This document shows, piece by piece, positions 1,973 through 64,000 of a stretch of DNA of 64,000 bases (the first letter of the stretch is position 1; each line of letters begins with the position of its first letter). The DNA lies in the NCBI GenBank assembly GCA_011109175.1, contig RDEW01000013.1, positions 1,034,181 to 1,098,180 on the forward strand, given 5' to 3'. Source of the stretch: Dicyema japonicum (Eukaryota; Animalia; Dicyemida). The notes under the pieces are model-generated. The model had not been told where the DNA came from. It saw only the letters and a program-made list of their open reading frames with translations, and did not search any database. Made by a program: the position numbers and the translations under genes.

Positions 1973-2399
1973 TAGGGGTTGCACTCACCAGGTTACAGTT
2001 TCATATTTAGAGGCATTTCTCTTGATGATTGAATTAAGGTTCCCTTCTTTCAGTTCGGTTGGGAGTGATCCGAGGAAAAGAGGTGCAAAGCAGAGAAGAC
2101 GCATCCAGGAGTCGAGTATTATCATCGATTAACTTTGAAAGACAGGAGGCAGCTACTGTACGCGCCGAACAGGGAAGAGACTTGCGGGAAGTATAGTTTA
2201 TTAGGTCCAAATCAGTTCATTGTCGTTCGTCCTGGAGTGAGGTTTACCATTTTTAATCGAGGCTCAAAAAGCTGCTCACTACAACCATATTTTTTTAAAA
2301 CATCAAGCAATCTTCGCTTTTCTTATTAATAGTGACTTGACTTGTACATTTTGTACACAAAAACTCTATCTTTAAAATTTTTATATACATAAATGGGGA

Positions 2400-3400
2400 T
2401 TTACATATACTTCTGGATGGAATTACTTTATAATTCATGTATCATCCAAATTGTAGATATGATCAGGTGAGTATGCCTTAGAAACTTCTTCGAATTCTTA
2501 ATACCGTTTTTAGATTTCAACGAGGTGATTAGTTCTTGTGCACAGACCTCTCTCATAAACATTTGCCAGTCTCCAGGAAGCACAATTGGACTTTTTCATT
2601 AATGTCTTTGGACATTACCTTCTGCTCTCAAAACCATACACCGGACACATCTTGTACGGTACATTATGGATTACCTTCAGACAACAATCATTATTCGCAT
2701 CAAAACAGTTCTTCAACACAGTACCTTTATTTCTCGGACAGAAAAAGTCAAACAAAAACTCTCAATGACGAAATATCAAAAATAATTAAAGAGCTGAAGC
2801 CGACTAACATTGCAAACTAGTATCGTCCCTTCCATTTTAGAAATCCGCTCAGACAGTATGGAGAGTAATTAAACAATTCGGCCCAAAATGACATTTAAAC
2901 ACAAAACAGCAGAAGGATCAGCACAGTCTTAACATACTTATGAAATATTACGCCAGTATAAGCCACAAAACTTTCAGGAAAATAGATGGGCCTTCTTTGT
3001 CCTCAATAGACGGAAGAGAATCCAGCCGATCGACTTTATCTCACGCTCAGATGACAGTGAGGGTTTGAAGTGGATGAATTCTTCCCTCTCAAGTGGGCCT
3101 GATTCTATATCTGTTATCTTACTAAAACACCATAGACCCATTGCAATTGATGCAATCACAGTGATTTTCAACAATTCAATAAACATGAATACAATTCTAC
3201 CTATCTGGAAACTGTCCTATATAAGCCCTATCCTTAAGCCTGGGAAGCCTAAGAATAATCCTTCATCATTTCGACAAATCTCTTTACTATGCACTCAAAA
3301 TTATTGGAAAAACTGATTCTTAATTTTAAACCCCGTCTCTTCCATTTTTATCCTCGCTACATGGATTCAAAAGAGGTTATTCAACCTTACACACCTCAAT
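2400..3400 (+). mobile_element. Degenerate LINE ORF2 relic (linker and RT N-terminus) inside the cassette
   Basis: SSGPDSIS...IWKLSYISPILKPGKPKNNPSSFRQISLL...SKLLEKLI, with frameshifts. Also present at about 19380-20400 and 33120-34060 on the minus strand. Confidence 0.8.
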
Positions 3401-4615
3401 ACCCTTCCAACAATTGGCTAAGTCTTCATCAGCAAATATTAATGTTTTGCTCTGTTCAACACAAGCAGATGGATTTGGTCGTCGCAAAAAGACGTTCTCG
3501 TTGGATCAGTTATTCACGACTGTTTGTGTTGTGTTAACAAAGATTATAAGCTTGGGGTTAATAAATAAATAGATTGTATCCTGTTCCCACGATCTGAGTA
3601 AGTCGTGTCATTATCAAACAATCGATCGATATCTACAATTATAGAAACCATCACTAATGTAGGAAAGGAAAAAAACTTTTTCCTACGACGGAAGGCATAG
3701 GCTTTCCTGAGACAACTTAAAATCTACATAAAGTCAATTAGGTCAAAACTTGGATTTATGAGTCAAAAATCGTTATACATATAACTAACTGATAAGATGG
3801 TGTTCGAAAAGGAATTCACAGTATAACAAAAGAATCAGTTATACTGTTCAAGGAAACTTTTGTGTTCACAAAATTTTTAAAAACAGTAACGCCACATTTC
3901 TAAGAGCAAAATTCCATGAAATTGACATTATTATTGATATACTGATAAGAGAGTTACTGACAAATTTATTTTGTGATTATTTATGACGTTTTCCTATCAA
4001 ACTCGATATCATAACAAAATCAATTTTTCAGATTATCAGTAGTTTTTTTCGGTTTGTCCAGGAAAAGAAATAGGTTAGTTAGGGATTAGAAAGACTGTGT
4101 TGCTTTTCTATCGGTCTATTATACTTCGACAGGTGGAGAAAGTCAGACAGAATGCTTAGGTGATTTTGAACATTATCTGAGCTATTTGAGTGTTTCTAGC
4201 ATTTGACAGTGAGATCATCATCGTTAAAATAGAAAGAGTTTGTTAGTTATGGACAATACAGAATTAATTCAATAAAGGTTTTCTTTAGTCTTTAAATAAG
4301 TCACTTATTATAATAATTTTCAGGAAGATATTTCAGTGGCACATTTTTGAGATTTAAAAAAAAGGCGGAAATTTTTATCAAATATTTCTGAATTCACAGT
4401 CAAATTTACTTAATCATTAAAGCTTAGTTGAAGTTATCGCGGGGGATTCGTAGATTTTGTATGAGTTTTTCAAACAGGAGAAATAGGGAGTTCAAGCTTT
4501 ATGGAGACATATATAAAATACTCAAGTAAAAATCCTAATTTCCTTAATTTAAATTAAATTGACAGTTAGTCAACACAAAACCCAATTTAATCCCAAAGTG
4601 AATATCGAGAACTAA

Positions 4616-5115
4616 TCAACAGTCCGTATACCAAACCGGGAAAATAACACAAATGATGGAATTACCGTCAAGATCCTCAATTTGAATTCTAAGCCCACGC
4701 AGGGATTCTATAATTGTTCAAACAAACAAGCAGCTTTTTCCTCAAAATTTGTTTTTTTTAATTCAATCTCAGATTGGTTCCCATTGATCAAATCACAACT
4801 CCCACATTCATATTTAAATATATATCTCATTATTTAGGGCTTGATTGGAAGAACACCTGCTCCCACAAATAACAATCAAATTTCCTCTACAAGAAGTTGT
4901 AGTCAAATCTAATAAAACTCACAAATTACTTGGTATGAAATGTAATATAGTTTTTGTAAAAAACTACAAAATATCTGATAATAATTCTGGCTTCGCTAGT
5001 ACTTCCATCTAAGTTCATATTTTTAATATTTTAGTACCACAATTATTAATTGCTATTTCATATTATAATAAGAATTGACTTTTAGAAATTAAACGCAGAA
5101 AATCGCAGCGTACAT
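4616..5115 (-). pseudogene. ML-domain (NPC2-like) secreted protein, copy 1, pseudogene
   Basis: Same 4-exon structure as 6966-7504, but codon 9 TTA>TAA (nonsense substitution) and frameshifts in exons 2-4. Confidence 0.8.
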
Positions 5116-5337
5116 TGTTTTATATAATTTTATTATTTTTTGACAAATTTAGGTTCCCATTAAAAAGTTAAAAAATTATAAAAACTTTCCATTTATAGTT
5201 TAATTAAAGTCTATAGACATTATCCCACGTGAGTTCTATTCGAACTGTTATTTACTTCATCTAAGTATTTTTTGTCTTTACCTTCTTCAAATTTTGAATC
5301 TTTACCTTTTTCAATTTTGACCTTCTTCAATTTTGAA

Positions 5338-5532
5338 TTCGAATCTCGCTGCTGTCCACCTGCTATAAAGTTCCACGCATCTACTATGCAGAAAGTTTGA
5401 CGAGTGACGCCGTCATCAGTGGATACTCACTGGCGAGCTGGATTGTTTAGAAAGGACACTCACACAAGAAAAAGAAAAAAAGAAGTGAAGATCATTCCTT
5501 GGTTCTACAATTAGTTAAAATTAACTGTTCTT
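5338..5532 (+). mobile_element. SINE body (B box to near-tail) forming one end of the cassette
   Basis: TTCGAATCTCGCTGCTG...TTAACTGTTCTT matches the SINE at 21098-21415. Equivalent pieces at 17242-17437 and 30939-31135 on the minus strand. Confidence 0.85.
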
Positions 5533-5918
5533 CCAGTAATAATCTGGCAACTAAATAACCACAATTATTCCATTGTCAACATATTCAACGACCTCGGGAT
5601 GTCGGAATAGATAATGGCGGTATTTATCGATCGCATAGCTTACGCTCCCAAGATCGGGTTGTTACTCTAATCCTCGCTGAGGACATTGAACGGAACCTCG
5701 TGCCCCACAACTACGGGAAATACCTCCGATAAATTAAATGATGTTTGAAAATTGAATCAAAAATGTAAATTTCATAAATTTTTCATTGGATATTTAAATA
5801 TATCTATAAATTTTTATAATTCATAAATATATCTATAAATTTTTATAATTCATAAATATATATATAAATTTTAATAATTAAAGAAATTAATTTATTCAAC
5901 GTGAACAAATGTGTCTGT
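5531..5918 (+). repeat. Dispersed repeat B (copy on the opposite strand at 24708-25060), possibly a LINE 5' end
   Basis: Direct nucleotide match to the reverse complement of 24708-25060. Contains LILAEDIERNL(V/L)P, a degenerate 2A-like motif. Confidence 0.8.
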
Positions 5919-5946: not shown

Positions 5947-7678
5947 CAACATAAAATCTACATAAAGTCAATTAGGTCAAAACTTGGATTTATGATTCAA
6001 AAATCGTTATACATATAACTAACTGATAAGATGGTGTTCGAAAAGGAATTCACAGTATAACAAAAGAATCAGTTATACTGTTTAAGGAAACTTTTGTGTT
6101 CACAAAATTTTTAAAAACAGTAACGCCACATATCTAAGAGCAAAATTCCATGAAATTGACATTATTATTGATATACTGATAAGAGAGTTACTGACAAATT
6201 TATTTTGTGATTATTTATGACGTTTTCCTATCAAACTCGATATCATAACAAAATCAATTTTTCAGATTATCAGTAGTTTTTTTCGGTTTGTCCAGGAAAA
6301 GAAATAGGTTAGTTAGGAATTAGAAAGACTGTGTTGCTTTTCTATCGGTCTATTATATTTCGACAAGTGGAGAAAGTCAGACAGAATGCTTAGGTGATTT
6401 TGAACATTATCTGAGCTATTTGAGTGTTTCTAGCATTTGACAGTGAGATCATCATCGTTAAAATAGATTTGAGTGTTTCTAGCATTTGACAGTGAGATCA
6501 TCATCGTTAAAATGGAAAGAGTTTGTTAGTTATGGACAATACAGAATTAATTCAATAAAGGTTTTCTTTAGTCACTTATTATAATGATTTTCAGGAAGAT
6601 ATTTTGTCGCGAGCGCTACTTCCAACTATGCGCTACCTTAGTCTTTAAATAAGTCACTTATTATAATGATTTTCAGGAAGATATTTCAGTGGCACATTTT
6701 TGAGATTTAAAAAAAGGCGGAAATTTTTATCAAATATTTCTGAATTCACAGTCAAATTTACTTAATCATTAATGCTTAGTTGAAGTTATCGTGGGGGATT
6801 CGCAAATTTTGTATGAGTCCTTCAAACAGGAGAATTGGAGGAGTTCAAGCTTTATGGAGACTTATATAAAATACTCAATTAAAAATCCTAATTTCCTTAA
6901 TTTAAATTAAATTGACAGTTAGTCAACACAAAACCCAATTTAACCCCAAAGTGAATATACGAGAACTAATACCTGGTAAAAAATACCCCAACCGGGAAAA
7001 GAACACAAATGATAGAATTCGCGTTAAAATCCTCCAATTTGAATTTTAAGTTCATGCAGCGATTCTATAATTATTCAAACAAACAACCAGAATTCTACCC
7101 TTTAAAATTCTTTTTGTTAATTCAATATCAATTGGGTTATCATTGATCAACTCAACACTCGTACATTGCATTCTAAATTTATATCTTCTATAATCTTGGG
7201 CTAAATCGGAAGGACACCAGCTCCTAGGAGTAGCAGTAAATTCTCCTCTCCAAGAAGTTGTATTAAAATCTAATAAAACTTACAAATTACTTGGTTTAAA
7301 CTGTAATGTGACAAGATATTTAGTCCTATACATGTCATGTGACATGAAAGGATTATGTCCTCTGAGAATAATTTTGGCATTGGTACTATTACTTCCATCT
7401 AAGTTTATATTTTTTAATATTTTAGTACCACAATTATTAATTTGCATTTCATAATGAAAAGAATTGACTTTTAGAAATAAAACACAGAAAATCGCAGCGT
7501 ACATTGTTTTATATAATTTTATTAGTTTTTGACAAATTTAGGTTAGCCATTAAAAAATTAAAAAAACTTTCCATTTATAGTTTAATTAAAGTCTATAGAC
7601 ATTATACCACGTGAGTTCTATCCGAACTGTTATTTACTTCATCTAAGTATTTTTTGTCTTTACCTTTTTCAAATTTTA
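5947..7678 (+). repeat. ML-gene cassette copy 2 (partial, tandem to copy 1)
   Basis: Matches about 3712-5300, with an internal tandem duplication near 6418-6510 and a duplication plus filler near 6571-6686. Confidence 0.9.
6966..7504 (-). CDS. Secreted ML-domain (MD-2/NPC2/Der p 2-like) protein, copy 2, intact, 154 aa
   Basis: Exons 7504-7429, 7398-7291, 7269-7088, 7064-6966; introns 30, 21 and 23 nt, all GT-AG. Product MYAAIFCVLFLKVNS-FHYEMQINNCDG...TLQFKP...RCMNLKFKLEDFNANSIICVLFPV. It has a signal peptide, an N-terminal Cys and the C-terminal 'kLxDxxgxsixCxxfPV' pattern typical of ML domains. Confidence 0.8.
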
Positions 7679-8079
7679 AAAACTTCAGTGAGATTTTCCA
7701 GAGTCAAGGAATTCCCAGTGCCTGGTCACTGAAGAAGAATCTTTTTCTTGTGTCTACACGAGTGAGAAAGTTTTTACGCTGGCAATTATGGGCGCGATAC
7801 TTGGAATTGATGCGTTCCACTCGGACTTTGGGAACTAAGTAGAACATCTTTCAGATATATTTGGGGTTATTAAAAATACTAAGGGATCCTCGACCGGTTC
7901 ATTTCCGTACAATTACTGTAGAGACAACTGAAGGGATAAGCAAAAAGTCTGTCTTTTCTCAAGAACCTGGATGTCTGGCTACACTCAGAAGCCATGATGA
8001 TTAGATAATATTTTAAATAAAAGAAACTGAGATTATTGATACTTTTCGTAAAAGTTGAACACAAAACAGAGGAAGGCCT

Positions 8080-17161: not shown

Positions 17162-20100
17162 CATAGTCTTTCTTTTTCCTGATTACAGATGATCCAATGC
17201 ATTCTACGAACTTCCTTATTTAGTTGCCAGATTATTACTGGAAGAACAGTTAATTTTAACTAATTGTAGAACCAAGGAATGATCTTCACTTCTTTTTTTC
17301 TTTTTCTTGTGTGAGTGTCCTTTCTAAACAATCCAGCTCGGCAGTGAGTATCCACTGATGACGGCGTCACTCGTCAAACCCTTTCTGCATCGTAGATGCG
17401 TGGAACCTTCAGCAGGTAAACAGCAGCGAGATTCGAATTCAAAATTGAAGAAGGTCAAAATTGAAAAAGGTAAAGATTCAAAATTTGAAGAAGGTAAAGA
17501 CAAAAAATACTTAGATGAAGTAAATAACAGTTCGAATAGAACTTACGTGGTATAATGTCTATAGACTTTAATTAAACTATAAATGGAAAGTTTTTTTAAT
17601 TTTTTAACTTTTTAATGGCGAACCTAAATTTTTAAAAAACTAATAAAATTATATAAAACGATGTACGCTGCGATTTTCTGTGTTTTATTTCTAAAAGTCA
17701 ATTCTTCTCCTAGTAATGATGAAATAGAAATTAATAATTGTGGTACTAAAATATTAAAAATATAAACTTAGATGGAAGTACTAGCGAAGCCAAAATTATT
17801 AAAAGATTGAATATAAGATGCAATGGTTATATAACAATAACTACATTACATTTCACACCAAGTAATTTGTGAGTTTTATTAGATTTGACTACAACTTCTT
17901 TAAGAGGAGATTATACTGTTATTCGTGGGAGCAGGTGTTCTTCCGATCAAGCCCTAAATATGAGGGAAATATATTTAAATATGAATGTGGGAGTTGTTTT
18001 GATCAATGGGATCCCATCTGAGCTTCAATTAAATAATAAACAAATATCGAGGAAAGACTGGTTGTTTGTTTGAACAATTATAGAATCACTGCTTGGACTT
18101 AAAATTCAAATTCAAGGACCGTAATGGTAATTCCATCATTTGTGTTATTTTCCCGGTTTCGTTACTACGACCTGTTTGTTAGTTCTCGATATTCACTTTG
18201 GGGTTAAATTGAGTTTTGTGTTGACTAACTGTCAATTTAATTTAAATTAAGGAAATTAGGATTTTTAATTGAGTATCTTATATATGTCTCCATAAAGCTT
18301 GAACTCCCTATTTCTCCTGTTTGAAAAACTCATACAAAATCTACGAATCCCCCGCGATAACTTCAACTAAGCTTTAATGATTAAGTAAATTTGACTGTGA
18401 ATTCAGAAATATTTGATAAAAATTTCCGCCTTTTTTTTAAATCTCAAAAATGTGCCACTGAAATATCTTCCTGAAAATCATTATAAGTGACTTATTTAAA
18501 GACTAAAGAAAACCTTTATTGAATTAATTCTGTATTGTCTATAACTAACAAACTCTTTCTATTTTAACGATGATGATCTCCAAATGCTAGAAACACTCAA
18601 ATAGCTTAGATAATGTTCAAAATCACCTAAGCATTCTGTCTGACTTTCTCCACCTGTCGAAGTATAATAGACCGATAGAAAAGCAACACAGTCTTTCTAA
18701 TCCCAACTAACCTATTTCTATTCCTGGACAAACCGAAAAAAACTACTGATAATCTGAAAAATTGATTTTGTTATGATATCGAGTTTGATAGGAAAACGTC
18801 ATAAATAATCACAAAATAGATTTGTCAGTAACTCTCTTATCAGTATATAAATAATAATGTCAATTTCATGGAATTTTGCTCTTAGATATGTGGCGTTACT
18901 GTTTTTAAAAATTTTGTGAACACAAAAGTTTCCTTGAACAGTATAACTGATTCTTTTGTTATACTGTGAATTCCTTTTCGAACACCATCTTATCAGTTAG
19001 TTATATGTATAACGATTTTTGAATCATAAATCCAAATTTTGACCTAATTGACTTTATGTAGATTTTATGTTGTCTCAGGAAAGCCTATGCCTTCCGTCGT
19101 AGGTAAAGGTTTTTTTCCTTTCCTACATTAGTGATGGTTTCTATAATTGTAGATATCGATCGATTGTTTGATAATGACACATCTTACTCAGATCGTGGGA
19201 ACAGGATACAATCTATTTATTTATTAACCCCAAGCTTATAATCTTTGTTAACACAACACAAACAGTCGTGAATAACTGATCCAACGAGAACGTCTTTTTG
19301 CGACGACCAAATCCATCTGCTTGTGTTGAACAGAGCAAAACATTAATTTTTGCTGATGAAGACTTAGCCAATTGTTGGAAGGGTATTGAGGTGTGTAAGG
19401 TTGAATAACCTCTTTTGAATCCATGTAGCGAGGATAAAAATGGAAGAGACGGGGTTTAAAATTAAGAATCAGTTTTTCCAATAATTTTGAGTGCATAGTA
19501 AAGAGATTTGTCGAAATGATGCAGGATTATTCTTAGGCTTCCCAGGCTTAAGGATAGGGCGTATATAGGACAGTTTCCAGATAGGTGGAATTGTATTCAT
19601 GTTTATTGAATTGTAGAAAATCACTGTGATTGCATCAATTGCAATGGGTCTATGGTGTTTTAGTAAGATAACAGAGATAGAATCAGGCCCACGTGAGAGG
19701 GAAGAATTCATCCACTTCAAACCCTCACTGTCATCTGAGCGTGAGATAAAGTCGATCGGCTGGATTCTCTTCCGTCTATTGAGGACAAAGAAGGCCCATC
19801 TATTTTCCTGAAAGTTTTGTGGCTTATACTGGCGTAATATTTCATAAGTATGTTGAGACTGTGCTGATCCTTCTGCTGTTTTGTGTTGAAATGTCATTTT
19901 GGGCCGAATTGTTTAATTACTCTCCATACTGTCTGAGCGGATTTCTAAAATGGAAGGGACGATACTAGTTTGCAATGTTAGTCGGCTTCAGCTCTTTAAT
20001 TATTTTTGATATTTCGTCATTGAGAGTTTTTGTTTGACTTTTTCTGTCCGAGAAAGGAAGGTACTGTGTTGAAGAACTGTTTTGATGCGAATAATGATTG

Positions 20101-20772
20101 TGGTCTGAAGATAATCCATAATGTACCGTACAAGATTTGTCGGTGCATGATTTTGAGAGCAGAAGGTAATGTCCGAAGACATTGATGAAAAAGTCCAATT
20201 GTGCTTCCTGGAGACTGGCAAATGTTTATGAGAGAGGTCTGTGCACAACAATTAATCACCTCGTTGAAATCTAAAAACGGTATTAAGAATTCGAAGAAGT
20301 TTTTGAGGCATACTCACCTGATCATATTTACAATTTGGATGATACATGAATTCCATCCAGAAGTATATGTAATCCCCATTTATCCAGAAGTATATGTAAA
20401 TCCCCATTTATGTATATAAAAATTTAAAAAAAATAAAAATTTAAAAAAAATAAAAATTTTAAAGATAGAGTTTTTGTGTACAAAATGTACAAGTCAAGTC
20501 ACTATTAATAAGAAAAGCAAAGATTGATGTTTTAAAAAAATATGGTTGTAGTGAGCAGCTTTTTGAGTCTCTATTAAAAATGGTAAACCTCACTCCAGGA
20601 CGAACGACAATGAACTGATTTGGACCTAATAAACCATACTTCCCGCAAGTCTCTTCCCTTCCCTGTTCGATAACCCGTAACCTAGGTCACAGTAGCTCGA
20701 CACCTACCACTATGCCATCCGGAAAATAATTGTCTTGAATAAAAAAATCATATTCATTATATTTCGTTTAAT
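17162..20772 (-). repeat. ML-gene cassette copy 3 (inverted relative to copy 1)
   Basis: Near-identical to 30857-34424. SINE body at 17242-17437 and SINE head at 20672-20722 bracket the cargo 17438-20665. Confidence 0.92.
17661..18182 (+). pseudogene. ML-domain protein copy 3 (frameshifted as assembled)
   Basis: Same introns. Exon 3 has -1, -2 and -1 contractions of short runs relative to copy 4, which could be sequencing errors. Confidence 0.7.
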
Positions 20773-30856: not shown

Positions 30857-33800
30857 TCATAGTCTTTTTTTTTCCTGATTACAGATGATCCAATGCATTC
30901 TACGAACTTTCCTTATTTAGTTGCCAGATTATTACTGGAAGAACAGTTAATTTTAACTAATTGTAGAACCAAGGAATGATCTACACTTCTTTTTTTCTTT
31001 TTCTTGTTTGAGTGTCCTTTCTAAACAATCCAGCTCGGCAATGAGTATCCCCTGATGACGGCGTCACTCGTCAAACCCTTTCTGCATCGTAGATGCGTGG
31101 AACCTTTCAGCAGGTAAACAGCAGCGAGATTCGAATTCAAAATTGAAGAAGGTCAAAATTGAAAAAGGTAAAGATTCAAAATTTGAAGAAGGTAAAGACA
31201 AAAAATACTTAGATGAAGTAAATAACAGTTCGAATAGAACTTACGTGGTATAATGTCTATAGACTTTAATTAAACTATAAATGGAAAGTTTTTTTAATTT
31301 TTTAACTTTTTAATGGCGAACCTAAATTTTTAAAAAACTAATAAAATTATATAAAACGATGTACGCTGCGATTTTCTGTGTTTTATTTCTAAAAGTCAAT
31401 TCTTCTCCTAGTAATGATGAAATAGAAATTAATAATTGTGGTACTAAAATATTAAAAATATAAACTTAGATGGAAGTACTAGCGAAGCCAAAATTATTAA
31501 AAGATTGTATGGTCTTGGGACTGAATTTTATTAATAACTACATTACATTTCACACCAAGTAATTTGTGAGTTTTATTAGATTTGACTACAACTTCTTTAA
31601 AAGGAGATTTTACTGTTATTCGTGGGAGCAGGTGTTCTTCCGATCAAGCCCTAAATTATGAGGGAAATATAATTAAATATGAATGTGGGAGTTGTGTTTT
31701 GATCAATGGGAACCCATCTGTGCTTCAATTAAATAATAAACAAATATCGGGGAAAAGACTGGTTGTTTGTTTGAACAATTATAGAATCGCTGCTTGGACT
31801 TAAAATTCAAATTGAAGGACCGTAATGGTAATTCCATCATTTGTGTTATTTTCCCGGTTTCGTTACTAGTAATACCGTTTGATTAGTTCTCGATATTCAC
31901 TTTGGGGTTAAATTGGGTTTTGTGTTGACTAACTGTCAATTTAATTTAAATTAAGGAAATTAGGATTTTTAATTGAGTATTTTATATATGTCTCCATAAA
32001 GCTTGAACTCCCTATTTCTCCTGTTTGAAAAACTCATACAAAATCTACGAATCCCCATCGATAACTTCAACTAAGCTTTAATGATTAAGTAAATTTGACT
32101 GTGAATTCAGAAATATTTGATAAAAATTTCCGCCTTTTTTTTAAATCTCAAAAATGTGCCACTGAAATATCTTCCTGAAAATCATTATAAGTGACTTATT
32201 TAAAGACTAAAGAAAACCTTTATTGAATTAATTCTGTATTGTCTATAACTAACAAACTCTTTCTATTTTAACGATGATGATCTCACTGTCAAATGCTAGA
32301 AACACTCAAATAGCTAAGATAATGTTCAAAATCACCTAAGCATTCTGTCTAACTTTCTCCACCTGTCGAAGTATAATAGACCGATAGAAAAGCAACACAG
32401 TCTTTCTAATCCCTAACTAACCTATTTCTTTTCCTGGACAAACCGAAAAAAACTACTGATAATCTGAAAAATTGATTTTGTTATGATATCGAGTTTGATA
32501 GGAAAACGTCATAAATAATCACAAAATAGATTTGTCAGTAACTCTCTTATCAGTATCTCAATAATAATGTCAATTTCATGGAATTTTGCTCTTAGATATG
32601 TGGCGTTACTGTTTTTAAAAATTTTGTGAACACAAAAGTTTCCTTGAACAGTATAACTGATTCTTTTGTTATACTGTGAATTCCTTTTCGAACACCATCT
32701 TATCAGTTAGTTATATGTATAACGATTTTTGACTCATAAATCCAAGTTTTGACCTAATTGACTTTATGTAGATTTTATGTTGTCTCAGGAAAGCCTATGC
32801 CTTCCGTCGTAGGAAAAAGTTTTTTTCCTTTCCTACATTAGTGATGGTTTCTATAATTGTAGATATCGATCGATTGTTTGATAATGACACGTCTTACTCA
32901 GATCGTGGGAACAGGATACAATCTATTTATTTATTAACCCCAAGCTTATAATCTTTGTTAACACAACACAAACAGTCGTGAATAACTGATCCAACGAGAA
33001 CGTCTTTTTGCGACGACCAAATCCATCTGCTTGTGTTGAACAAAGCAAAACATTAATTTTTGATGATGAAGACTTAGCCAATTGTAGAAAGGGTATTGAG
33101 GTTTGTAAGGTTGAATAACCTCTTTTGAATCCATGTAGCGAGATAAAAATGGAAGAGACGGGGTTTAAAATTAAGAATCAGTTTTTCCAATAATTTTGAG
33201 TGCATAGTAAAGAGATTTGTCGAAATGATGCAGGATTATTCTTAGGCTTCCAGGCTTAAGGATAGGGCTTATATAGTACAGTTTCCAGATAGGTAGAATT
33301 GTATTCATGTTTATTGAATTGTAGAAAATCACTGTGATTGCATCAATTGCAATGGGTCTATAGTGTTTTAGTAAGATAACAGAGATAGAATCAGGCCCAC
33401 GTGAGAGGGAAGAATTCATCCACTTCAAACCCTCACTGTCATCTGAGCGTGAGATAAAGTCGATCGGCTGGATTCTCTTCCGTCTATTGAGGACAAAGAA
33501 GGCCCATCTATTTTCCTGAAAGTTTTGTGGCTTATACTGGCGTAATATATCATAAGTATGTTAAGACTGTGCTGATCCTTCTGCTGTTTTGTGTTGAAAT
33601 GTCATTTTGGGCCGAATTGTTTAATTACTCTCCATACTGTCTGAGCGGATTTCTAAAATGGAAGGGACGATACTAGTTTGCAATGTTAGTCGGCTTCAGC
33701 TCTTTAATTATTTTTGATATTTCGTCATTTAGAGTTTTTGTTTGACTTTTTCTGTCCGAGAAAGGAAGGTACTGTGTTGAAGGAACTGTTTTGATGCGAA

Positions 33801-34424
33801 TAATGATTGTGGTCTGAAGATAATCCATAATGTACCGTACAAGATGTGTCCGGTGCATAGTTTTGAGAACAGAAGGTAATGTCCGAAGACATTGATGAAA
33901 AAGTCCAATTGTGCTTCCTGGAGACTGGCAAATGTTTATGAGAGAGGTATGTGCACCTCGTTGAAATCTAAAAACGGTATTAAGAATTCGAAGAAGTTTT
34001 TGAGGCATACCCACCTGATCATATCTACAATTTGGATGATACATGAATTCCATCCAGAAGTATATGTAATCCCCATTTATGTATATTAAAAATTTAAAAT
34101 AAATAAAAATTTTAAAGATAGAGTTTTTGTGTACAAAATGTACAAGTCAAGTCACTATTAATAAGAAAAGCAAAGATTGATGTTTTAAAAAAATATGGTT
34201 GTAGTGAGCAGCTTTTTGAGTCTCTATTAAAAATGGTAAACCTCACTCCAGGACGAACGACAATGAACTGATTTGGACCTAATAAACCATACTTCCCGCA
34301 AGTCTCTTCCCTTCCCTGTTCGATAACCCGTAACCTAGGTCACAGTAGCTCGACACCTACCACTAAGCCATCCGGAAAATATTTGTCTTGAATAAAAACT
34401 CATATTCATTATATTTCGTTTAAT
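30857..34424 (-). repeat. ML-gene cassette copy 4 (direct repeat of copy 3)
   Basis: Shares both outer flanks with copy 3. Its right flank continues into sequence matching 21915-21957, indicating a ~1.1 kb deletion relative to copy 3's neighbourhood. Confidence 0.92.
31359..31886 (+). CDS. ML-domain protein copy 4; intact except one missing T in a T-run in exon 2
   Basis: Introns 31441-31469, 31559-31579 and 31762-31784. Adding one T at about 31527 restores ...GTEFLLITTLHFTP-N-LTTTS...YECGSC...NRCLDLKFKLKDRNGNSIICVIFPVSLLVIPFD*. Confidence 0.65.
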
Positions 34425-59917: not shown

Positions 59918-62310
59918 CCGAAATCCGAAACCAATTTATTCAACAGTAAGTAAGGAGTTAGTTTAAGTGGTATTTAAACGTGTCCGCCTATGCGGCCTGG
60001 ACACTTCCAATGCACCACGTCTCCATTTAGTCTCCTTCTATCGTCGGATCCCATCGATCCTTTTCTCTACAATATTTTTGACCAATGTTAGAATCTTGTC
60101 TTCTTCAGTACTGAGAACATCAGAAAGCCTTTTCCCCAAAGCCAACTTTATTGCTGACCTTCTGGTTTTTTCCATAAGTAACAATTCTTTCTTTTGGCAA
60201 AAGAAAAACCATGCTTCGCATCCATGTAGCAGCTCCGGAAGAATGACTCTCATGAAGATGAACAAGAAGGTCTCCAAGCTTACAAACAACTTTTTCGTAC
60301 ATAAAAGTGCTTGAAGCGCCTTCTTCCTTCTTCGTCTGATGTCCTCCGTGAAGGAACCTCTCCCGTCGATTACTACCCCTAGGTAGCGCAGTGAATTTAC
60401 TTTAGGAATCTCTAGTGAGTAAGGCTGGGTCTGATGCCTCCTTAGGCGACTGACTCTTAAATGGCTGGACTTCTCAGTGGACAGTCGCATCCCTCTCTTG
60501 GTGCACATCCGGTGGAGTTGGAAAGTCTGACAAGAATATGTTGAACAGAAGTGGGGTCAAGACAGAACCTTGTGGAACTCCCCTCTTCAGTATGATGTCT
60601 TTTGACATATTTGCTCCAACACGTACTTGGGAAGTCCGTCTGTTAGGAAGTCCTTTATCCACATGAAAAGTTTCTTTTGAATATCAGCTGCTGCTAGCCT
60701 TGATAGGAGGGCTTCGTGCCACACGCTATCAAAAGCCTTGGACAGATCTAAACATACCAGACTGATTCCTGACCTCTCAATACCATTGAATCTAACTGGT
60801 AGATGCAGTCCGTGCATGATTTTCCAGGTCTGAAGCCACGGAAACCACTTTCTTCTAAGTGGTCGTTAAGCCTTCTAAAGATAATTCAATCGATAATCTT
60901 GGAGATCGAACAGATGAGGCTATAGCTGAGTGGGTCCCTCCTCGATTTTCCCGGTTTCATTATCATTCTGACTATAGAAGATTTCCAGCGTTTTGGGACA
61001 TGGCCATGATGAATGCTTGCATTGAATATATTCTTCAGAATGGGAAATAGAGCCTCTAGGGCATTCGCGAACAATCTCATGCTTAGATGGTCAAGTCCTG
61101 GAGCGTTAGCCTTGCTTGTCATGATTGAAGTCATGACTTCTTCCGTAGTTATTTTCATTTCAGTATCTTTGAGATCGTCCAAACAGTAGGTTAAAATTTC
61201 ACGTGAAGAATCTAACATCTCCCTCGGAATAAGCTCCATCGGGTTGACCCCTGAATGCGGTCCAGTTGCTTCTTAAAGATATCTGGGGATTCTTCCATAG
61301 AACATAGTCTACCTTCTGGCTTGGTCAAGGATATTTTTGTGTCATTCCTTTTCTGGCCAATTATTATTTTATAGAACTTCCAGAACGAGGGGTCTTTGGT
61401 GTTTAGTTTACTTTCCTCTACCCTCAAACATTGTTCTTGAGATAGTCTTGTTCCTTCTTCAATGGCTTTCTTGATTATCTTCAATTGTCCGGTCAATGCA
61501 ATCCGGTCTATCCAGTCCACACATCTTCTGAGTTTGGTCCTCAGGCGATTCCTTTGATCGATCAAGGATTGAGAGCGAAAGACTGATGCTCTTTCCATGA
61601 TTGGTACTTGAGGATCTCCTCCTTGCGTAAAGCATTAAGTATGTCTCCATCATGATGGAGAGTTCATTGTCTATGATGTCGATTTCACTTCGGGAATAAT
61701 CTTTATCCTTCCAGTCTTTGAGGTTTCTTGATAAGTACCTTCTGTAGTGTTCTCAGTTTACTCTTGTTAGGTCGTAAACACAGAGTCCATGGGGTCTGGA
61801 GCTAGGTTCAATAACATCTCTTGGGGTATATGGTCACTCCCGATGTCCCACATGATCATCGGCTTCTCTAAATTAGTGTAGAGCACTGGTGACACCAGGA
61901 ACACCCCAAGCATGTCTCCCCCGTAGTGCGAGTAATGATTCGGTTTTTCCGATGTCAAAATCTCAAAGCCAGTCTGATTCCATCATCGTTAGTTCCGAGG
62001 CACCCATATTTAATGTTCTTGGCATTTAGATCACCCACTAGGATAGACATATCGTTTCTTGTGAAGAATTCTTCAATTTCTGTGGAGCCCTTTCTGAGGT
62101 CTTTTGAATACATTCTACCGGCGTGTATCCAACAGCCACAGCATATCACCTCGACGGAAACAAATTCACAGTGTGTATTCGCGGTATGGGGGAAGCAAGC
62201 TTCGCAACACACACCAAGATACAAAAATAAGCATTATATCTTGCCCCTTGTAAGGGCGTCCCAGATATAAAGCTGGAAAGAACTGTTGAATAAATTGGTT
62301 TCGGTTTCGG
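59918..62310. mobile_element. Insertion bounded by 30/29-bp terminal inverted repeats and a 9-bp TSD (MITE-like ends enclosing a LINE)
   Basis: TIRs 59918-59947 (CCGAAATCCGAAACCAATTTATTCAACAGT) and 62282-62310 (inverse). AGCGCGGGA 59909-59917 / AGCACGGGA 62311-62319. Confidence 0.85.
59956..62249 (-). mobile_element. 5'-truncated degenerate APE+RT LINE lacking the YADD segment
   Basis: APE (VGDLNAKN, IGSDH), RT (APGLD, DLSKAFDSV, GVPQGSVLTPLLFNIF, YLGV). PPDV is joined directly to CTKRGMRLS. 3' hairpin at 59980-60004. Confidence 0.88.
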
Positions 62311-63086: not shown

Positions 63087-64000
63087 CAATTAAACAATAA
63101 ATCGAAAGTTAATTTTTTCCATTTTTAATTTTTTGATGGCTAACCTAAATTTGCCAAAAAATTAATAAAATTATATAAAACAATGTTCACTGCGATTTTC
63201 TGTGTCTTATTTCTAAAAGTCAATTCCTATGAACTCCCTTATGAGAATTGTGGTATTAACTATTAAAAACATAAACTTAGAGGGAATGAGCAACACAGTC
63301 AGTGTTAGCGTCCACATCTATGATTCATTGATAGCCAGTGATGAAACAACTATCAGATATACTTTCGTGGCAGGTGGTTTGTGAGTTTGATTAGACTTTA
63401 ATTCGACTTCTTTTAGTGGAGTAATAAGTGTTGTTCCTGGGAGAACATGTCTTCGTGGCTACACATTCATAGGTTATCATCAAATCGAAAGAACTTTTAA
63501 TTGTCCGGTATGTCATTTGAGAAGTGGAAGACAAAATAAGTTCGATTTCATTAGAAAATTTTTAGCAGATTTACTGCTGGTTCTTTGTTTAAAAAATTAT
63601 AGCATCCCTGCATGGACATTAAACTCAAAATCGTGGATCAAATGGGTAATACCGTCGTTTGTGCTATTTTCCCGGTTCAGCTGAGACTGGAATAATTAGA
63701 TTAGTTCACTTTTGGGGTTAAAATCGGGTTTTTTGTTGATTAACTGACAATTTAATTTAAATTCAGGAAATAAGGACTGTTAATGGAGTACTTTATATAG
63801 GTCCCCCATAAAGCTTTAGCTCCTCCATTTATCTATTTGAGAGACTTATTCCAAATCTGGCAATCCCCTCTGTGATAACTTCAACTAAGCTTTTGTTAAT
63901 TAAATTCGAATGTGAACTCAAAAATACTTGATAAAAATATCCGCCCTTTTTTTAAATCTCATAAATGTCCGAATGTAAGTTTTTCCTGAAGGTCATTATT
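63087..64000 (-). repeat. ML-gene cassette copy 5, most diverged, runs off the window end
   Basis: Promoter-side and 3' flanks are homologous to 17570-18490. Confidence 0.8.
63183..63695 (+). CDS. Secreted ML-domain protein copy 5, intact, 146 aa
   Basis: Introns 63253-63280 (28 nt), 63374-63394 (21 nt) and 63580-63602 (23 nt). Product MFTAIFCVLFLKVNS-YELPYENCEG...FNCPVCHLRSG...HPCMDIKLKIVDQMGNTVVCAIFPVQLRLE*, with six mature Cys. Confidence 0.82.

What the first reader, a model, noticed from the sequence alone, without database searches (positions are those of the whole stretch)
6966..7504. Hypervariable secreted ML-domain (NPC2/Der p 2-like) gene family under apparent strong diversifying selection
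Seen: five paralogues (4616-5115, 6966-7504, 17661-18182, 31359-31886, 63183-63695) share three tiny introns. Between copies 2 and 4, the first 15 codons (signal peptide) are identical at nucleotide level and each intron differs by one base. In the gap-free 60 codons of exon 3, however, my hand count is 38 amino-acid-changing, 1 synonymous-only and 21 identical codons. Established: ML domains bind lipids (sterol by NPC2, lipid A by MD-2). Conserved leaders and introns with hypervariable mature regions are typical of effector, toxin and immune families. Inference: this is a parasite or symbiont lipid-binding effector or receptor repertoire diversifying against a host. It is invisible to ORF finders because of the 21-30 nt introns.
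Basis: partly seen in the sequence, partly recalled or inferred. Interest (0 to 1): 0.88.

Follow-up and report, generated by a model that had tools for sequence, protein, structure and literature searches.

The report
Fast-diversifying secreted ML-like gene family
The octopus-kidney parasite Dicyema japonicum carries about 15 tiny-intron genes for small, probably secreted NPC2/ML-like proteins whose coding parts change far faster than their introns and flanks, which marks selection for variety; but about half the copies are broken and no expression data could be obtained.

Summary
The window (Dicyema japonicum, contig C35) has five copies of a 4-exon gene with three introns of 21-30 nt. The genome has at least 15 loci in three subfamilies.

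Between copies 2 and 4:
- The 15 signal-peptide codons are identical, and each intron differs by one base.
- The 3' flank differs by 2.7%.
- Exons 2 and 3 differ by 31-36%.
- My exon-3 count is 37 amino-acid-changing, 1 synonymous-only and 20 identical codons.

Only copies 2 and 5 are cleanly intact. Copies 1 and 4 are broken, and copy 3 stays open only with a 16-nt intron.

Selection for amino-acid change is supported:
- One-ratio omega is 3.2 for exon 3.
- It is 2.1-2.2 for the whole mature region of the five intact genes (likelihood-ratio statistic 15-23).
- pN/pS is 2.7 in the true frame and 0.7 in both wrong frames.

ML/NPC2 ancestry is supported only indirectly. A family HMM hits the genome's one canonical PF02221 gene, colinearly and with matching intron phases. 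Pfam finds nothing on single exons, and no fold could be predicted.

Expression, splicing, lipid binding and the host-interaction role remain untested. Other notes of this scan report the same pattern in unrelated families of this genome.

The parts
6966..7504 (-). Copy 2, an intact gene of 154 aa. Exons 7504-7429, 7398-7291, 7269-7088, 7064-6966. Introns 7428-7399 (30 nt), 7290-7270 (21 nt), 7087-7065 (23 nt).
   Evidence: Splicing gives one open frame that ends at TAG. DNA contigs of 4 runs match 7061-7413.
63183..63695 (+). Copy 5, an intact subfamily B gene of 146 aa. Exons 63183-63252, 63281-63373, 63395-63579, 63603-63695.
   Evidence: Two further copies encode the identical protein, at C35:1107796 and on C334. 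There are no DNA differences over about 1.8 kb around the gene.
4616..5115 (-). Copy 1, a pseudogene as assembled.
   Evidence: In-frame TAA at codon 9, frameshifts in exons 1-3, and intron-3 donor CT instead of GT. No open model was found.
17661..18182 (+). Copy 3, of doubtful status. Indels of -1 and -2 nt, 13 codons apart in exon 3, restore the frame but remove both central Cys. A further -1 indel is compensated only by a 16-nt intron 3.
31359..31886 (+). Copy 4, broken by a 1-nt frameshift in exon 2 (31470-31558). Exons 3 and 4 are open.
31497..31540 (+). Hypervariable patch in exon 2. It has 15-16 mismatches and 1 indel against copy 3, while the surrounding 3.5-kb cassettes are 98-100% identical.
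   Evidence: Neither version of the patch occurs elsewhere in the assembly.
7505..7700 (-). Conserved 5' flank of copy 2. It includes an ATTGGC/AATGGC..AACC.AAATTT motif about 45-60 nt before the ATG that is shared by subfamilies A, B and C.
6700..6965 (-). Conserved 3' flank of copy 2. It is 95-99% identical within subfamily A and about 84% identical to subfamily B, which is more conserved than the exons.
   Evidence: Its contig depth is about 7-9 times that of copy 2's unique exons.
17163..20721 (+). The 3.5-kb repeated cassette that carries copy 3. The same unit lies at 30858-34374 (copy 4) and inverted at 2171-5560 (copy 1). A truncated unit at 5947-7700 carries copy 2. The cassette contains a decayed LINE reverse-transcriptase ORF on the opposite strand (19469-19897).

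Best explanation
This is a real, lineage-specific multigene family of Dicyema japonicum. It encodes small secreted proteins of 145-154 aa descended from an ML/NPC2-type lipid-binding protein.

The genes multiply as part of a roughly 3.5-kb cassette and in local tandem arrays. This recent copying, together with gene conversion, keeps flanks and introns nearly identical. After copying, the mature protein changes rapidly under positive selection for amino-acid replacement, mainly in exons 2 and 3. The signal peptide, the Cys framework, the C-terminal FPV strand, the introns and the proximal flanks are kept. Many copies then decay, giving birth-and-death evolution.

Shown here:
- the gene structure;
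- the excess of frame-specific, amino-acid-changing substitutions;
- the conservation of leader, introns and flanks;
- the broken copies.

Inferred:
- secretion;
- an ML beta-sandwich fold with a lipid or sterol cavity;
- a role at the parasite-host interface in the octopus renal sac, either in binding varied host lipids or other ligands, or in evading host recognition.
For: Gene model:
- Five different sequences (copy 2, L002, L008, copy 5, L012) each become one open frame when the same three GT..AG introns are removed.
- Intron lengths fit published Dicyema introns (PMC6736024; PMC13644364).

Selection:
- NG86 pN/pS in exon 3 is above 1 in all 36 pairs and reaches 7.3-9.1 (Fisher p of 2e-4 to 1e-3).
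- GY94 one-ratio omega is 3.24 for exon 3 (2dlnL 22.5) and 2.74 for exons 3+4 (2dlnL 25.5).
- Omega is 2.05-2.18 over 127 mature codons of the intact genes only (2dlnL 15.2-17.7).
- Pooled pN/pS is 2.73 in the true frame and 0.67 and 0.70 in the wrong frames. Codon positions 1 and 2 change about twice as often as position 3.
- Differences per codon fit a Poisson distribution, so there is no multi-nucleotide clustering in exon 3.
- There is no transition-type mutational signature.

Conserved parts:
- 12 of 15 signal residues are invariant, against 17 of 127 mature residues. The invariant mature residues include five Cys and FPV.

Contrast with noncoding DNA:
- Copy 2 versus copy 4: exons differ by 22-36%, introns by 2 substitutions in 73 nt, and the 3' flank by 2.7%.

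ML ancestry:
- The family HMM scores 21.1 bits on the genome's only PF02221-positive gene, against a maximum of 6.3 for shuffles.
- The mature-only HMM scores 18.4 bits against 6.0 for shuffles.
- hhalign aligns 105 colinear columns at E 2.7e-4.
- The shared motifs are (E/N)NC-x-G at the start and C-x-x-FPV at the end. Intron phases 1, 1, 0 fall at the same or nearly the same positions.

No intrinsic exon mutator:
- The three copy-5-type genes have no differences across the gene, while their outer flanks differ by about 1%.
Against: - No RNA evidence for transcription or splicing could be obtained. Only DNA runs were served.
- Pfam does not recognise single exons, and the PF02221 genome scan does not pick up these loci. 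No fold was predicted.
- The nonsynonymous divergence of copy 2 (about 0.31) is about 10 times the flank divergence. That would be an unusually high adaptive rate if the flanks date the duplication.
- Synonymous divergence over the whole mature region of copy 2 versus L002 (0.13) exceeds flank divergence (about 0.04). This suggests the exons are partly older than the homogenised flanks.
- The PHI test shows some mosaicism (p = 0.014), and recombination can inflate omega tests.
- The exon-2 patch between copies 3 and 4 looks like a block event, and it coincides with copy 4's frameshift.
Confidence: 0.6

Rival explanations
1. The exons are old and the flanks are young. The paralogues are ancient, and their hypervariable exon cores have been kept different for a long time. 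Repeated gene conversion or cassette replacement homogenises flanks, introns and conserved exon ends, and stops at the mismatch-dense cores. On this view the sharp contrast reflects concerted evolution more than a burst of adaptive change. Positive selection would still act, but more slowly.
For: - The copy-5 trio has no differences over about 1.8 kb around the gene, although the outer flanks differ by about 1%. This shows that homogenisation occurs in this family.
- PHI p = 0.014, and site partitions conflict along the exons.
- Synonymous divergence of the mature region is above flank divergence.
- Conserved islands of 60-90 nt surround every intron.
Against: - In exon 3, pS (0.03-0.12) is close to noncoding divergence for several pairs.
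- Most of copy 2's 24 private exon-3 changes are derived relative to subfamily B.
- Converting 21-30-nt introns separately from their adjoining exons would need very short tracts.
- No donor exists for the exon-2 patch.
Confidence: 0.25
2. An exon-confined mutational process operates, such as patch-wise, non-templated replacement or error-prone repair targeted to the coding parts. It generates the diversity, and selection only filters it.
For: - A patch of about 36 nt has 15-16 mismatches and an indel inside otherwise 98-100% identical cassettes. No template for it exists in the assembly.
- Indels are enriched in the exons of copies 3 and 4.
- Other notes of this scan report the same pattern in unrelated families of this genome (unchecked).
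Against: - A frame-blind process cannot give pN/pS of 2.7 in the true frame against 0.7 in the wrong frames, nor the position 1,2 > 3 bias.
- There is no mutational spectrum bias.
- Differences per codon in exon 3 fit a Poisson distribution.
- The copy-5 trio shows no exon change despite about 1% flank divergence.
Confidence: 0.08
3. The family is decaying. Relaxed constraint after duplication, with no positive selection, accounts for the amino-acid changes, and the intact copies are intact by chance.
For: About half of the loci are broken. Omega for exon 4 alone does not differ from 1.
Against: - Omega is significantly above 1, not equal to 1, and this also holds for intact genes only.
- The signal peptide, Cys residues and the FPV motif stay conserved.
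- Neutral decay would hit introns and flanks equally, and it does not.
Confidence: 0.05
4. The pattern is an assembly artefact. Repeat flanks were collapsed or polished to a consensus, and the exons are chimeric mixtures of reads from a pooled, heterozygous sample.
For: - The published assembly used gap closing and haplotype merging on a sample with 1.24% heterozygosity.
- One family member is interrupted by an N gap.
- Copy 1's exons had little contig support at 97% identity or above.
Against: - Independent Logan contigs from 4 runs span copy 2's exons 2-3 and both inner introns with 0-1 differences.
- The frame-specific substitution pattern cannot come from misassembly.
- Five distinct open reading frames are recovered.
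Confidence: 0.02

Closest known systems
ML / NPC2 / Der p 2 family (Pfam PF02221, MD-2-related lipid-recognition domain)
   Same: - A short signal peptide is followed by a single domain of about 130 aa.
- The first Cys sits in an (E/N)NC-x-G motif just after the leader, and the last Cys sits just before a hydrophobic C-terminal strand (C-x-x-FPV).
- The alignment to the genome's own PF02221-positive gene is colinear, with three introns in the same phases at the same or nearly the same positions.
   Different: - Pfam does not detect the single exons.
- The Cys framework is altered. The paired Cys of the canonical second exon are absent, and two other invariant Cys (C80 and C125 in copy-2 numbering) are present. 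Copy 2 has an odd number of Cys.
- The fold and lipid binding are untested.
Lineage-specific NPC2 expansions under positive selection in arthropods (for example arachnid NPC2 genes, PMC13151251, abstract seen)
   Same: Tandem or lineage-specific multiplication of small secreted ML proteins, with evidence of positive selection.
   Different: - Here the host lineage is a dicyemid parasite.
- Whole-gene omega is about 2-3, rather than a few selected sites.
- About half of the copies are broken.
- The copies travel in a 3.5-kb cassette that also holds a LINE remnant.
- A chemosensory role is unlikely in an animal of about 30 cells without sense organs (my own inference).
Conotoxin-type gene architecture: conserved signal, introns and UTRs around a hypervariable mature peptide (from my own knowledge, not tested here)
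   Same: The leader, introns and flanks are nearly invariant, and the mature coding part diverges many times faster with dN above dS.
   Different: The product is not a short disulfide-rich peptide or a venom component. It is a 130-aa beta-sandwich-type domain. The introns are 21-30 nt rather than kilobases.
NPC2-like secreted effectors of rust fungi (bioRxiv 10.1101/2021.08.18.456830, abstract seen)
   Same: A parasite uses an expanded ML/NPC2-like secreted family in host interaction.
   Different: That case is in fungi and has functional data on suppression of host cell death. No functional data exist here.

Membership tests
ML / NPC2 domain family (PF02221) | Significant match to the family profile HMM | tested here: inconclusive
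   Only single exons could be given by reference. Eight exon translations gave no PF02221 hit at E up to 10. The six-frame PF02221 scan of the genome found only the canonical gene L017 (25.3 bits against a cut-off of 22.7), not these loci. The full-length spliced protein could not be submitted.
ML / NPC2 domain family (PF02221) | Demonstrable homology to a bona fide family member | tested here: met
   The family HMM scores 21.1 bits on spliced L017 (maximum 6.3 in 2,000 shuffles). The mature-only HMM scores 18.4 bits (maximum 6.0 in 5,000 shuffles). hhalign gives E 2.7e-4 over 105 colinear columns, with only 42% probability.
ML / NPC2 domain family (PF02221) | Architecture: N-terminal signal peptide plus one domain of about 130 aa, with nothing else | tested here: met
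   The proteins are 145-154 aa. A 15-residue hydrophobic leader aligns with the leader of L017. No signal-peptide predictor was available.
ML / NPC2 domain family (PF02221) | Conserved cysteine framework (first-to-last disulfide plus two local pairs) | tested here: inconclusive
   The first and last Cys are at the expected places, and a central C-x-x-C is present in most copies. The canonical early Cys pair is absent, and two other invariant Cys are present. Disulfide connectivity cannot be tested.
ML / NPC2 domain family (PF02221) | Immunoglobulin-like beta sandwich with a lipid-binding cavity | not testable with these tools
   The spliced protein has no reference, so no structure was predicted. 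The Atlas and PDB profile searches with exon 3 alone gave nothing usable.
ML / NPC2 domain family (PF02221) | Shared gene structure with the canonical ML gene of the same genome | tested here: met
   Intron 1 is in phase 1 in the codon right after the first Cys in both genes. Intron 2 is in phase 1 within 2 codons. Intron 3 is in phase 0 within 1 codon.
Diversifying secreted multigene family (effector, toxin or immune type) | dN/dS above 1 in the mature region, with a conserved leader | tested here: met
   Omega is 2.05-3.24 with 2dlnL of 15-25. The wrong-frame control gives 0.67 and 0.70. Signal-peptide pN is 0-0.085.
Diversifying secreted multigene family (effector, toxin or immune type) | Expression and secretion at the host interface | not testable with these tools
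   No RNA run was served. The four runs found are DNA, because their contigs run unspliced through the introns.

The most novel reading that the evidence does not exclude
Dicyema japonicum may have a genome-wide way of making variety in secreted and surface proteins. Short exon patches would be replaced or rewritten without an assembled template, while the tiny introns and flanks stay untouched. The ML-like family would be one target among several; other notes of this scan describe the same pattern in LRR-like, LAMP-like and lectin-like families.
Probability: 0.1. Interest if true: 0.85.

Novelty: new member of a known kind. Interest (0 to 1): 0.55.

Why it matters
Dicyemids are among the simplest animals, and almost nothing is known about how they deal molecularly with their cephalopod host. 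The genome paper lists only ten multicopy gene clusters, mostly linked to endocytosis. I found no mention of an ML/NPC2 family in its main text or held supplementary files.

A secreted, lipid-binding-type family with whole-gene omega of 2-3 would be the first concrete candidate for a host-interaction or ligand-scavenging repertoire in this phylum. It can be tested directly by transcript mapping, localisation and lipid-binding assays.

The case also shows that 21-30-nt introns hide whole gene families from ORF-based annotation. It gives an unusually clean natural example of exon-confined diversification, because near-identical introns and flanks serve as an internal neutral yardstick.

Tried and rejected
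- **Pfam on eight single-exon translations:** no ML hit. The only match was a chance zf-MIZ hit at E 0.05.
- **PF02221 six-frame scan of the genome:** it found only the canonical gene L017, not this family.
- **Exon-3 profile against 1.84 billion representative proteins:** four hits, three of them carrying doubled CXXCH / cytochrome c (multihaem-type) Pfam matches and the fourth with no Pfam match. They match the C-x-x-C motif, so they are spurious and no outside relatives were found.
- **Exon-3 profile against PDB sequences:** only chance hits at E above 0.5.
- **ESM Atlas with exon 3:** no usable hit.
- **RNA evidence:** no RNA run was served. The single read-laying run, on 3,501 bases, showed only unspliced DNA contigs.
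- **Templated origin of the exon-2 patch:** neither version occurs elsewhere in the assembly at up to 3 mismatches in 30.
- **C334 cluster as a haplotig of the C35 cluster:** rejected. A 14-kb intergenic stretch has no long match on C334.
- **Deaminase-type hypermutation:** rejected. Transitions to transversions run at about 0.6, with no dominant class.
- **Ciliate genetic code:** rejected. The genes end at TAG, TAA or TGA, and the frame is lost after the stop.
- **Supplementary files of the genome paper:** no mention of PF02221, NPC2 or ML.
Full report
**What the window is**

The window is G000:C35:1034181-1098180, in a genome of 67,542,437 bases and 377 contigs. These figures match the published Dicyema japonicum assembly: 67.5 Mb, 377 scaffolds, mean intron 38 bp, heterozygosity 1.24%, 49% repeats (PMC6736024). 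A 2026 survey names D. japonicum as the only animal outside the myxozoans with introns under 30 bp (PMC13644364). The genetic code is standard: the genes end at TAG, TAA or TGA, and the copies lose a common frame right after the stop.

**The observation**

Each has four exons and three GT..AG introns of 28-30, 21 and 23 nt.

Copy 2 versus copy 4:
- The first 45 coding bases are identical.
- Intron 1 differs by one extra A. Introns 2 and 3 differ by one substitution each.
- Exon 2 differs at 32/89 aligned bases, exon 3 at 56/182 and exon 4 at 22/99.
- The 3' flank differs at only 17/637.

My exon-3 codon count is 37 amino-acid-changing, 1 synonymous-only and 20 identical out of 58 scored codons.

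**State of the copies**

Only copy 2 (154 aa) and copy 5 (146 aa) are cleanly open.
- Copy 1 has an in-frame TAA at codon 9, several frameshifts and CT in place of the GT donor of intron 3.
- Copy 4 has a 1-nt frameshift in exon 2.
- Copy 3 has -1 and -2 indels 13 codons apart. They restore the frame but replace both central Cys. A further -1 indel is rescued only by a 16-nt intron.

**Size and layout of the family**

- A DNA search of the genome finds 16 places. An exon-3 protein profile finds 17. Apart from two short DNA matches of the 5' end, on C290 and C345 (subfamily C below), and one chance-level profile hit on C20, they lie on C35 (993-1,116 kb) and C334 (219-338 kb).
- Further intact genes are L002 (145 aa), L008 (145 aa) and L012 (148 aa). 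L003 and L004 are broken. L013 is cut by an N gap.
- Two more divergent loci, on C290 and C345, share the promoter-proximal motif, the leader, intron 1 and the C-terminal strand. Each carries a stop or a frameshift.
- There are thus at least 15 loci in three subfamilies: A (copies 1-4 and L002-L004), B (copy 5, L008-L010, L012, L013) and C.
- C334 is not a haplotig of C35. A 14-kb intergenic stretch has no long match there.

Subfamily A copies sit in a repeated cassette of about 3.5 kb that is 98% identical between copies. It lies at 17163-20721 and 30858-34374, inverted at 2171-5560, and truncated at 5947-7700. The cassette also holds a decayed LINE reverse-transcriptase ORF on the other strand.

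**Read support**

Only DNA runs were served: four runs from one sample. Their contigs pass unspliced through the introns.
- A 353-nt contig in two of the runs (shorter, overlapping contigs in the other two) matches copy 2 at 7061-7413 with 0-1 differences, so copy 2's divergent exons are not an assembly chimera.
- The flanks have about 7-9 times the depth of copy 2's unique exons. This fits seven or more near-identical flank copies.
- Copy 1's exons had little support at 97% identity or above. That proves nothing either way.
- No RNA evidence could be obtained.

**Is it an ML domain?**

Direct tests failed or could not be run:
- Pfam finds nothing on single exons.
- The PF02221 genome scan finds only one canonical gene, L017 on C312, at 25.3 bits against a cut-off of 22.7.
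- Exon-3 profile searches of 1.84 billion proteins, of PDB sequences and of the ESM Atlas gave only spurious hits or none.
- The spliced protein has no reference, so I could not fold it.

Indirect evidence is good:
- An HMM of the spliced family, built locally from the stored loci, hits spliced L017 at 21.1 bits, against at most 6.3 in 2,000 shuffles.
- Without the leaders it scores 18.4 bits, against at most 6.0 in 5,000 shuffles.
- hhalign aligns 105 colinear columns at E 2.7e-4, though the probability is only 42% against a single-sequence template.
- Both proteins start with (E/I)P(F/Y)ENC-x-G after the leader and end with C-x-x-FPV.
- The three introns have the same phases (1, 1, 0), at the same codon, within 2 codons and within 1 codon.

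The Cys framework is modified. Five Cys are invariant in the mature part. The canonical early pair is missing, and copy 2 has an odd number of Cys. I therefore read the family as derived from an ML/NPC2 gene, at about 85%. The fold is untested.

**Selection**

- NG86 pN/pS in exon 3 is above 1 in all 36 pairs. It is 7.3 for copy 2 versus L002 (p = 2e-4) and 9.1 for L002 versus copy 1.
- Over the whole mature region it is 1.0-2.6, and it falls toward 1 as divergence saturates.
- Maximum-likelihood one-ratio omega (GY94, iqtree2) is 3.24 for exon 3 (2dlnL 22.5 against omega = 1), 1.39 for exon 4 (not significant) and 2.74 for both together (2dlnL 25.5).
- With the five intact genes only and 127 gap-free mature codons, omega is 2.05-2.18 (2dlnL 15.2-17.7).

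Two controls matter most:
- In the two wrong reading frames the pooled pN/pS is 0.67 and 0.70, against 2.73 in the true frame. Codon positions 1 and 2 differ about twice as often as position 3 in every pair. A frame-blind mutational process or a misassembly cannot produce this.
- The three copy-5-type genes show no differences over about 1.8 kb around the gene, while their outer flanks differ by about 1%. Duplication as such therefore does not scramble exons.

Other checks agree. The substitution spectrum has no bias, and differences per codon follow a Poisson distribution. The leader is conserved (12/15 invariant residues), as are only 17/127 mature residues.

**What remains unsettled**

The size of the contrast is not fully explained.
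- Copy 2's nonsynonymous divergence (about 0.31 against the subfamily consensus) is about ten times the flank divergence.
- Either nearly every surface replacement was favoured after a recent cassette duplication, or the exon cores are older than the flanks, which were homogenised.

Evidence for homogenisation:
- the copy-5 trio;
- a modest PHI signal (p = 0.014);
- synonymous divergence of the whole mature region above flank divergence.

Evidence against a purely old origin:
- exon-3 pS is near noncoding divergence in several pairs;
- most of copy 2's private changes are derived.

The patch of about 36 nt in exon 2 that separates copies 3 and 4 has 15-16 mismatches plus the indel that breaks copy 4. 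It sits inside cassettes that are 98-100% identical, and it has no template anywhere in the assembly. I cannot explain it. The region is hypervariable in length and sequence in every copy.

**Function (inference)**

Dicyemids live in the octopus renal sac and take up nutrients from urine by endocytosis (PMC6736024). A secreted ML-type protein could scavenge sterols or lipids, or it could face host recognition. Whole-gene omega above 1 together with birth-and-death turnover fits an interface with a changing partner better than a housekeeping carrier. The single conserved canonical gene, L017, is the likely housekeeping NPC2.

**Comparison and novelty**

- Expansions of NPC2/ML genes under positive selection are known in arthropods. 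NPC2-like effectors are reported in rust fungi (abstracts).
- The conserved-leader, conserved-intron, variable-mature-part architecture recalls conotoxin genes (from my own knowledge).
- I found no paper linking dicyemids to this family.
- I class it as a new member of a known kind. The unusual traits are the strength of the contrast with noncoding DNA, the cassette context and the many broken copies.
- Other unchecked notes of this scan describe the same pattern in unrelated secreted and surface families of this genome. If that holds, the phenomenon is genome-wide and more interesting than this family alone.

Noticed in passing
window 62151-62301 (-): A U2 spliceosomal snRNA gene (Rfam RF00004, 46.9 bits against a gathering score of 46) lies about 0.9 kb upstream of copy 5.
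   Followed up: no
window 19469-19897 (-), also in the cassette copies at about 33200-33600 and 2900-3300: A decayed LINE-type reverse-transcriptase ORF of 142 aa lies inside the 3.5-kb cassette that carries the ML-like gene, on the opposite strand. The cassette may have spread as LINE-associated DNA.
   Followed up: partly
window 5353-5469: A very high-copy repeat lies between copies 1 and 2. Summed contig depth is about 1,000 times that of unique sequence in all four DNA runs.
   Followed up: no
L017 (G000:C312:562646-565873), gene at about 1231-1785: This is the genome's only canonical PF02221 (NPC2-like) gene. As assembled it reads through only with an extra 46-nt intron. Without that intron it needs two frameshifts in the stretch before the D-A-C-Q-Y-F motif. 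That points to either an unusual fourth intron or small indel errors in the assembly.
   Followed up: partly
L011 (copy 5), L010 (C35:1107796) and L009 (C334:336869): Three copies encode the same protein. They have no DNA differences over about 1.8 kb centred on the gene, while the outer flanks differ by about 1%. This is a sign of recent gene conversion. A fourth copy, L013, is cut by an N gap, so the tandem array is not fully assembled.
   Followed up: yes
L015 (C290:94668-94812) and L016 (C345:344192-344327): A third, more divergent subfamily shares the upstream ATTGGC..AACC.AAATTT motif, the leader, a 25-nt intron 1 at the same place and the C-terminal strand. Both loci carry a stop or a frameshift in exon 3.
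   Followed up: partly
window 17883-18060 (copy 3, exon 3): Two indels of -1 and -2 nt, 13 codons apart, restore the reading frame and replace the segment that holds both central cysteines. This could be chance decay, or a frameshift-based way of changing a protein segment.
   Followed up: partly
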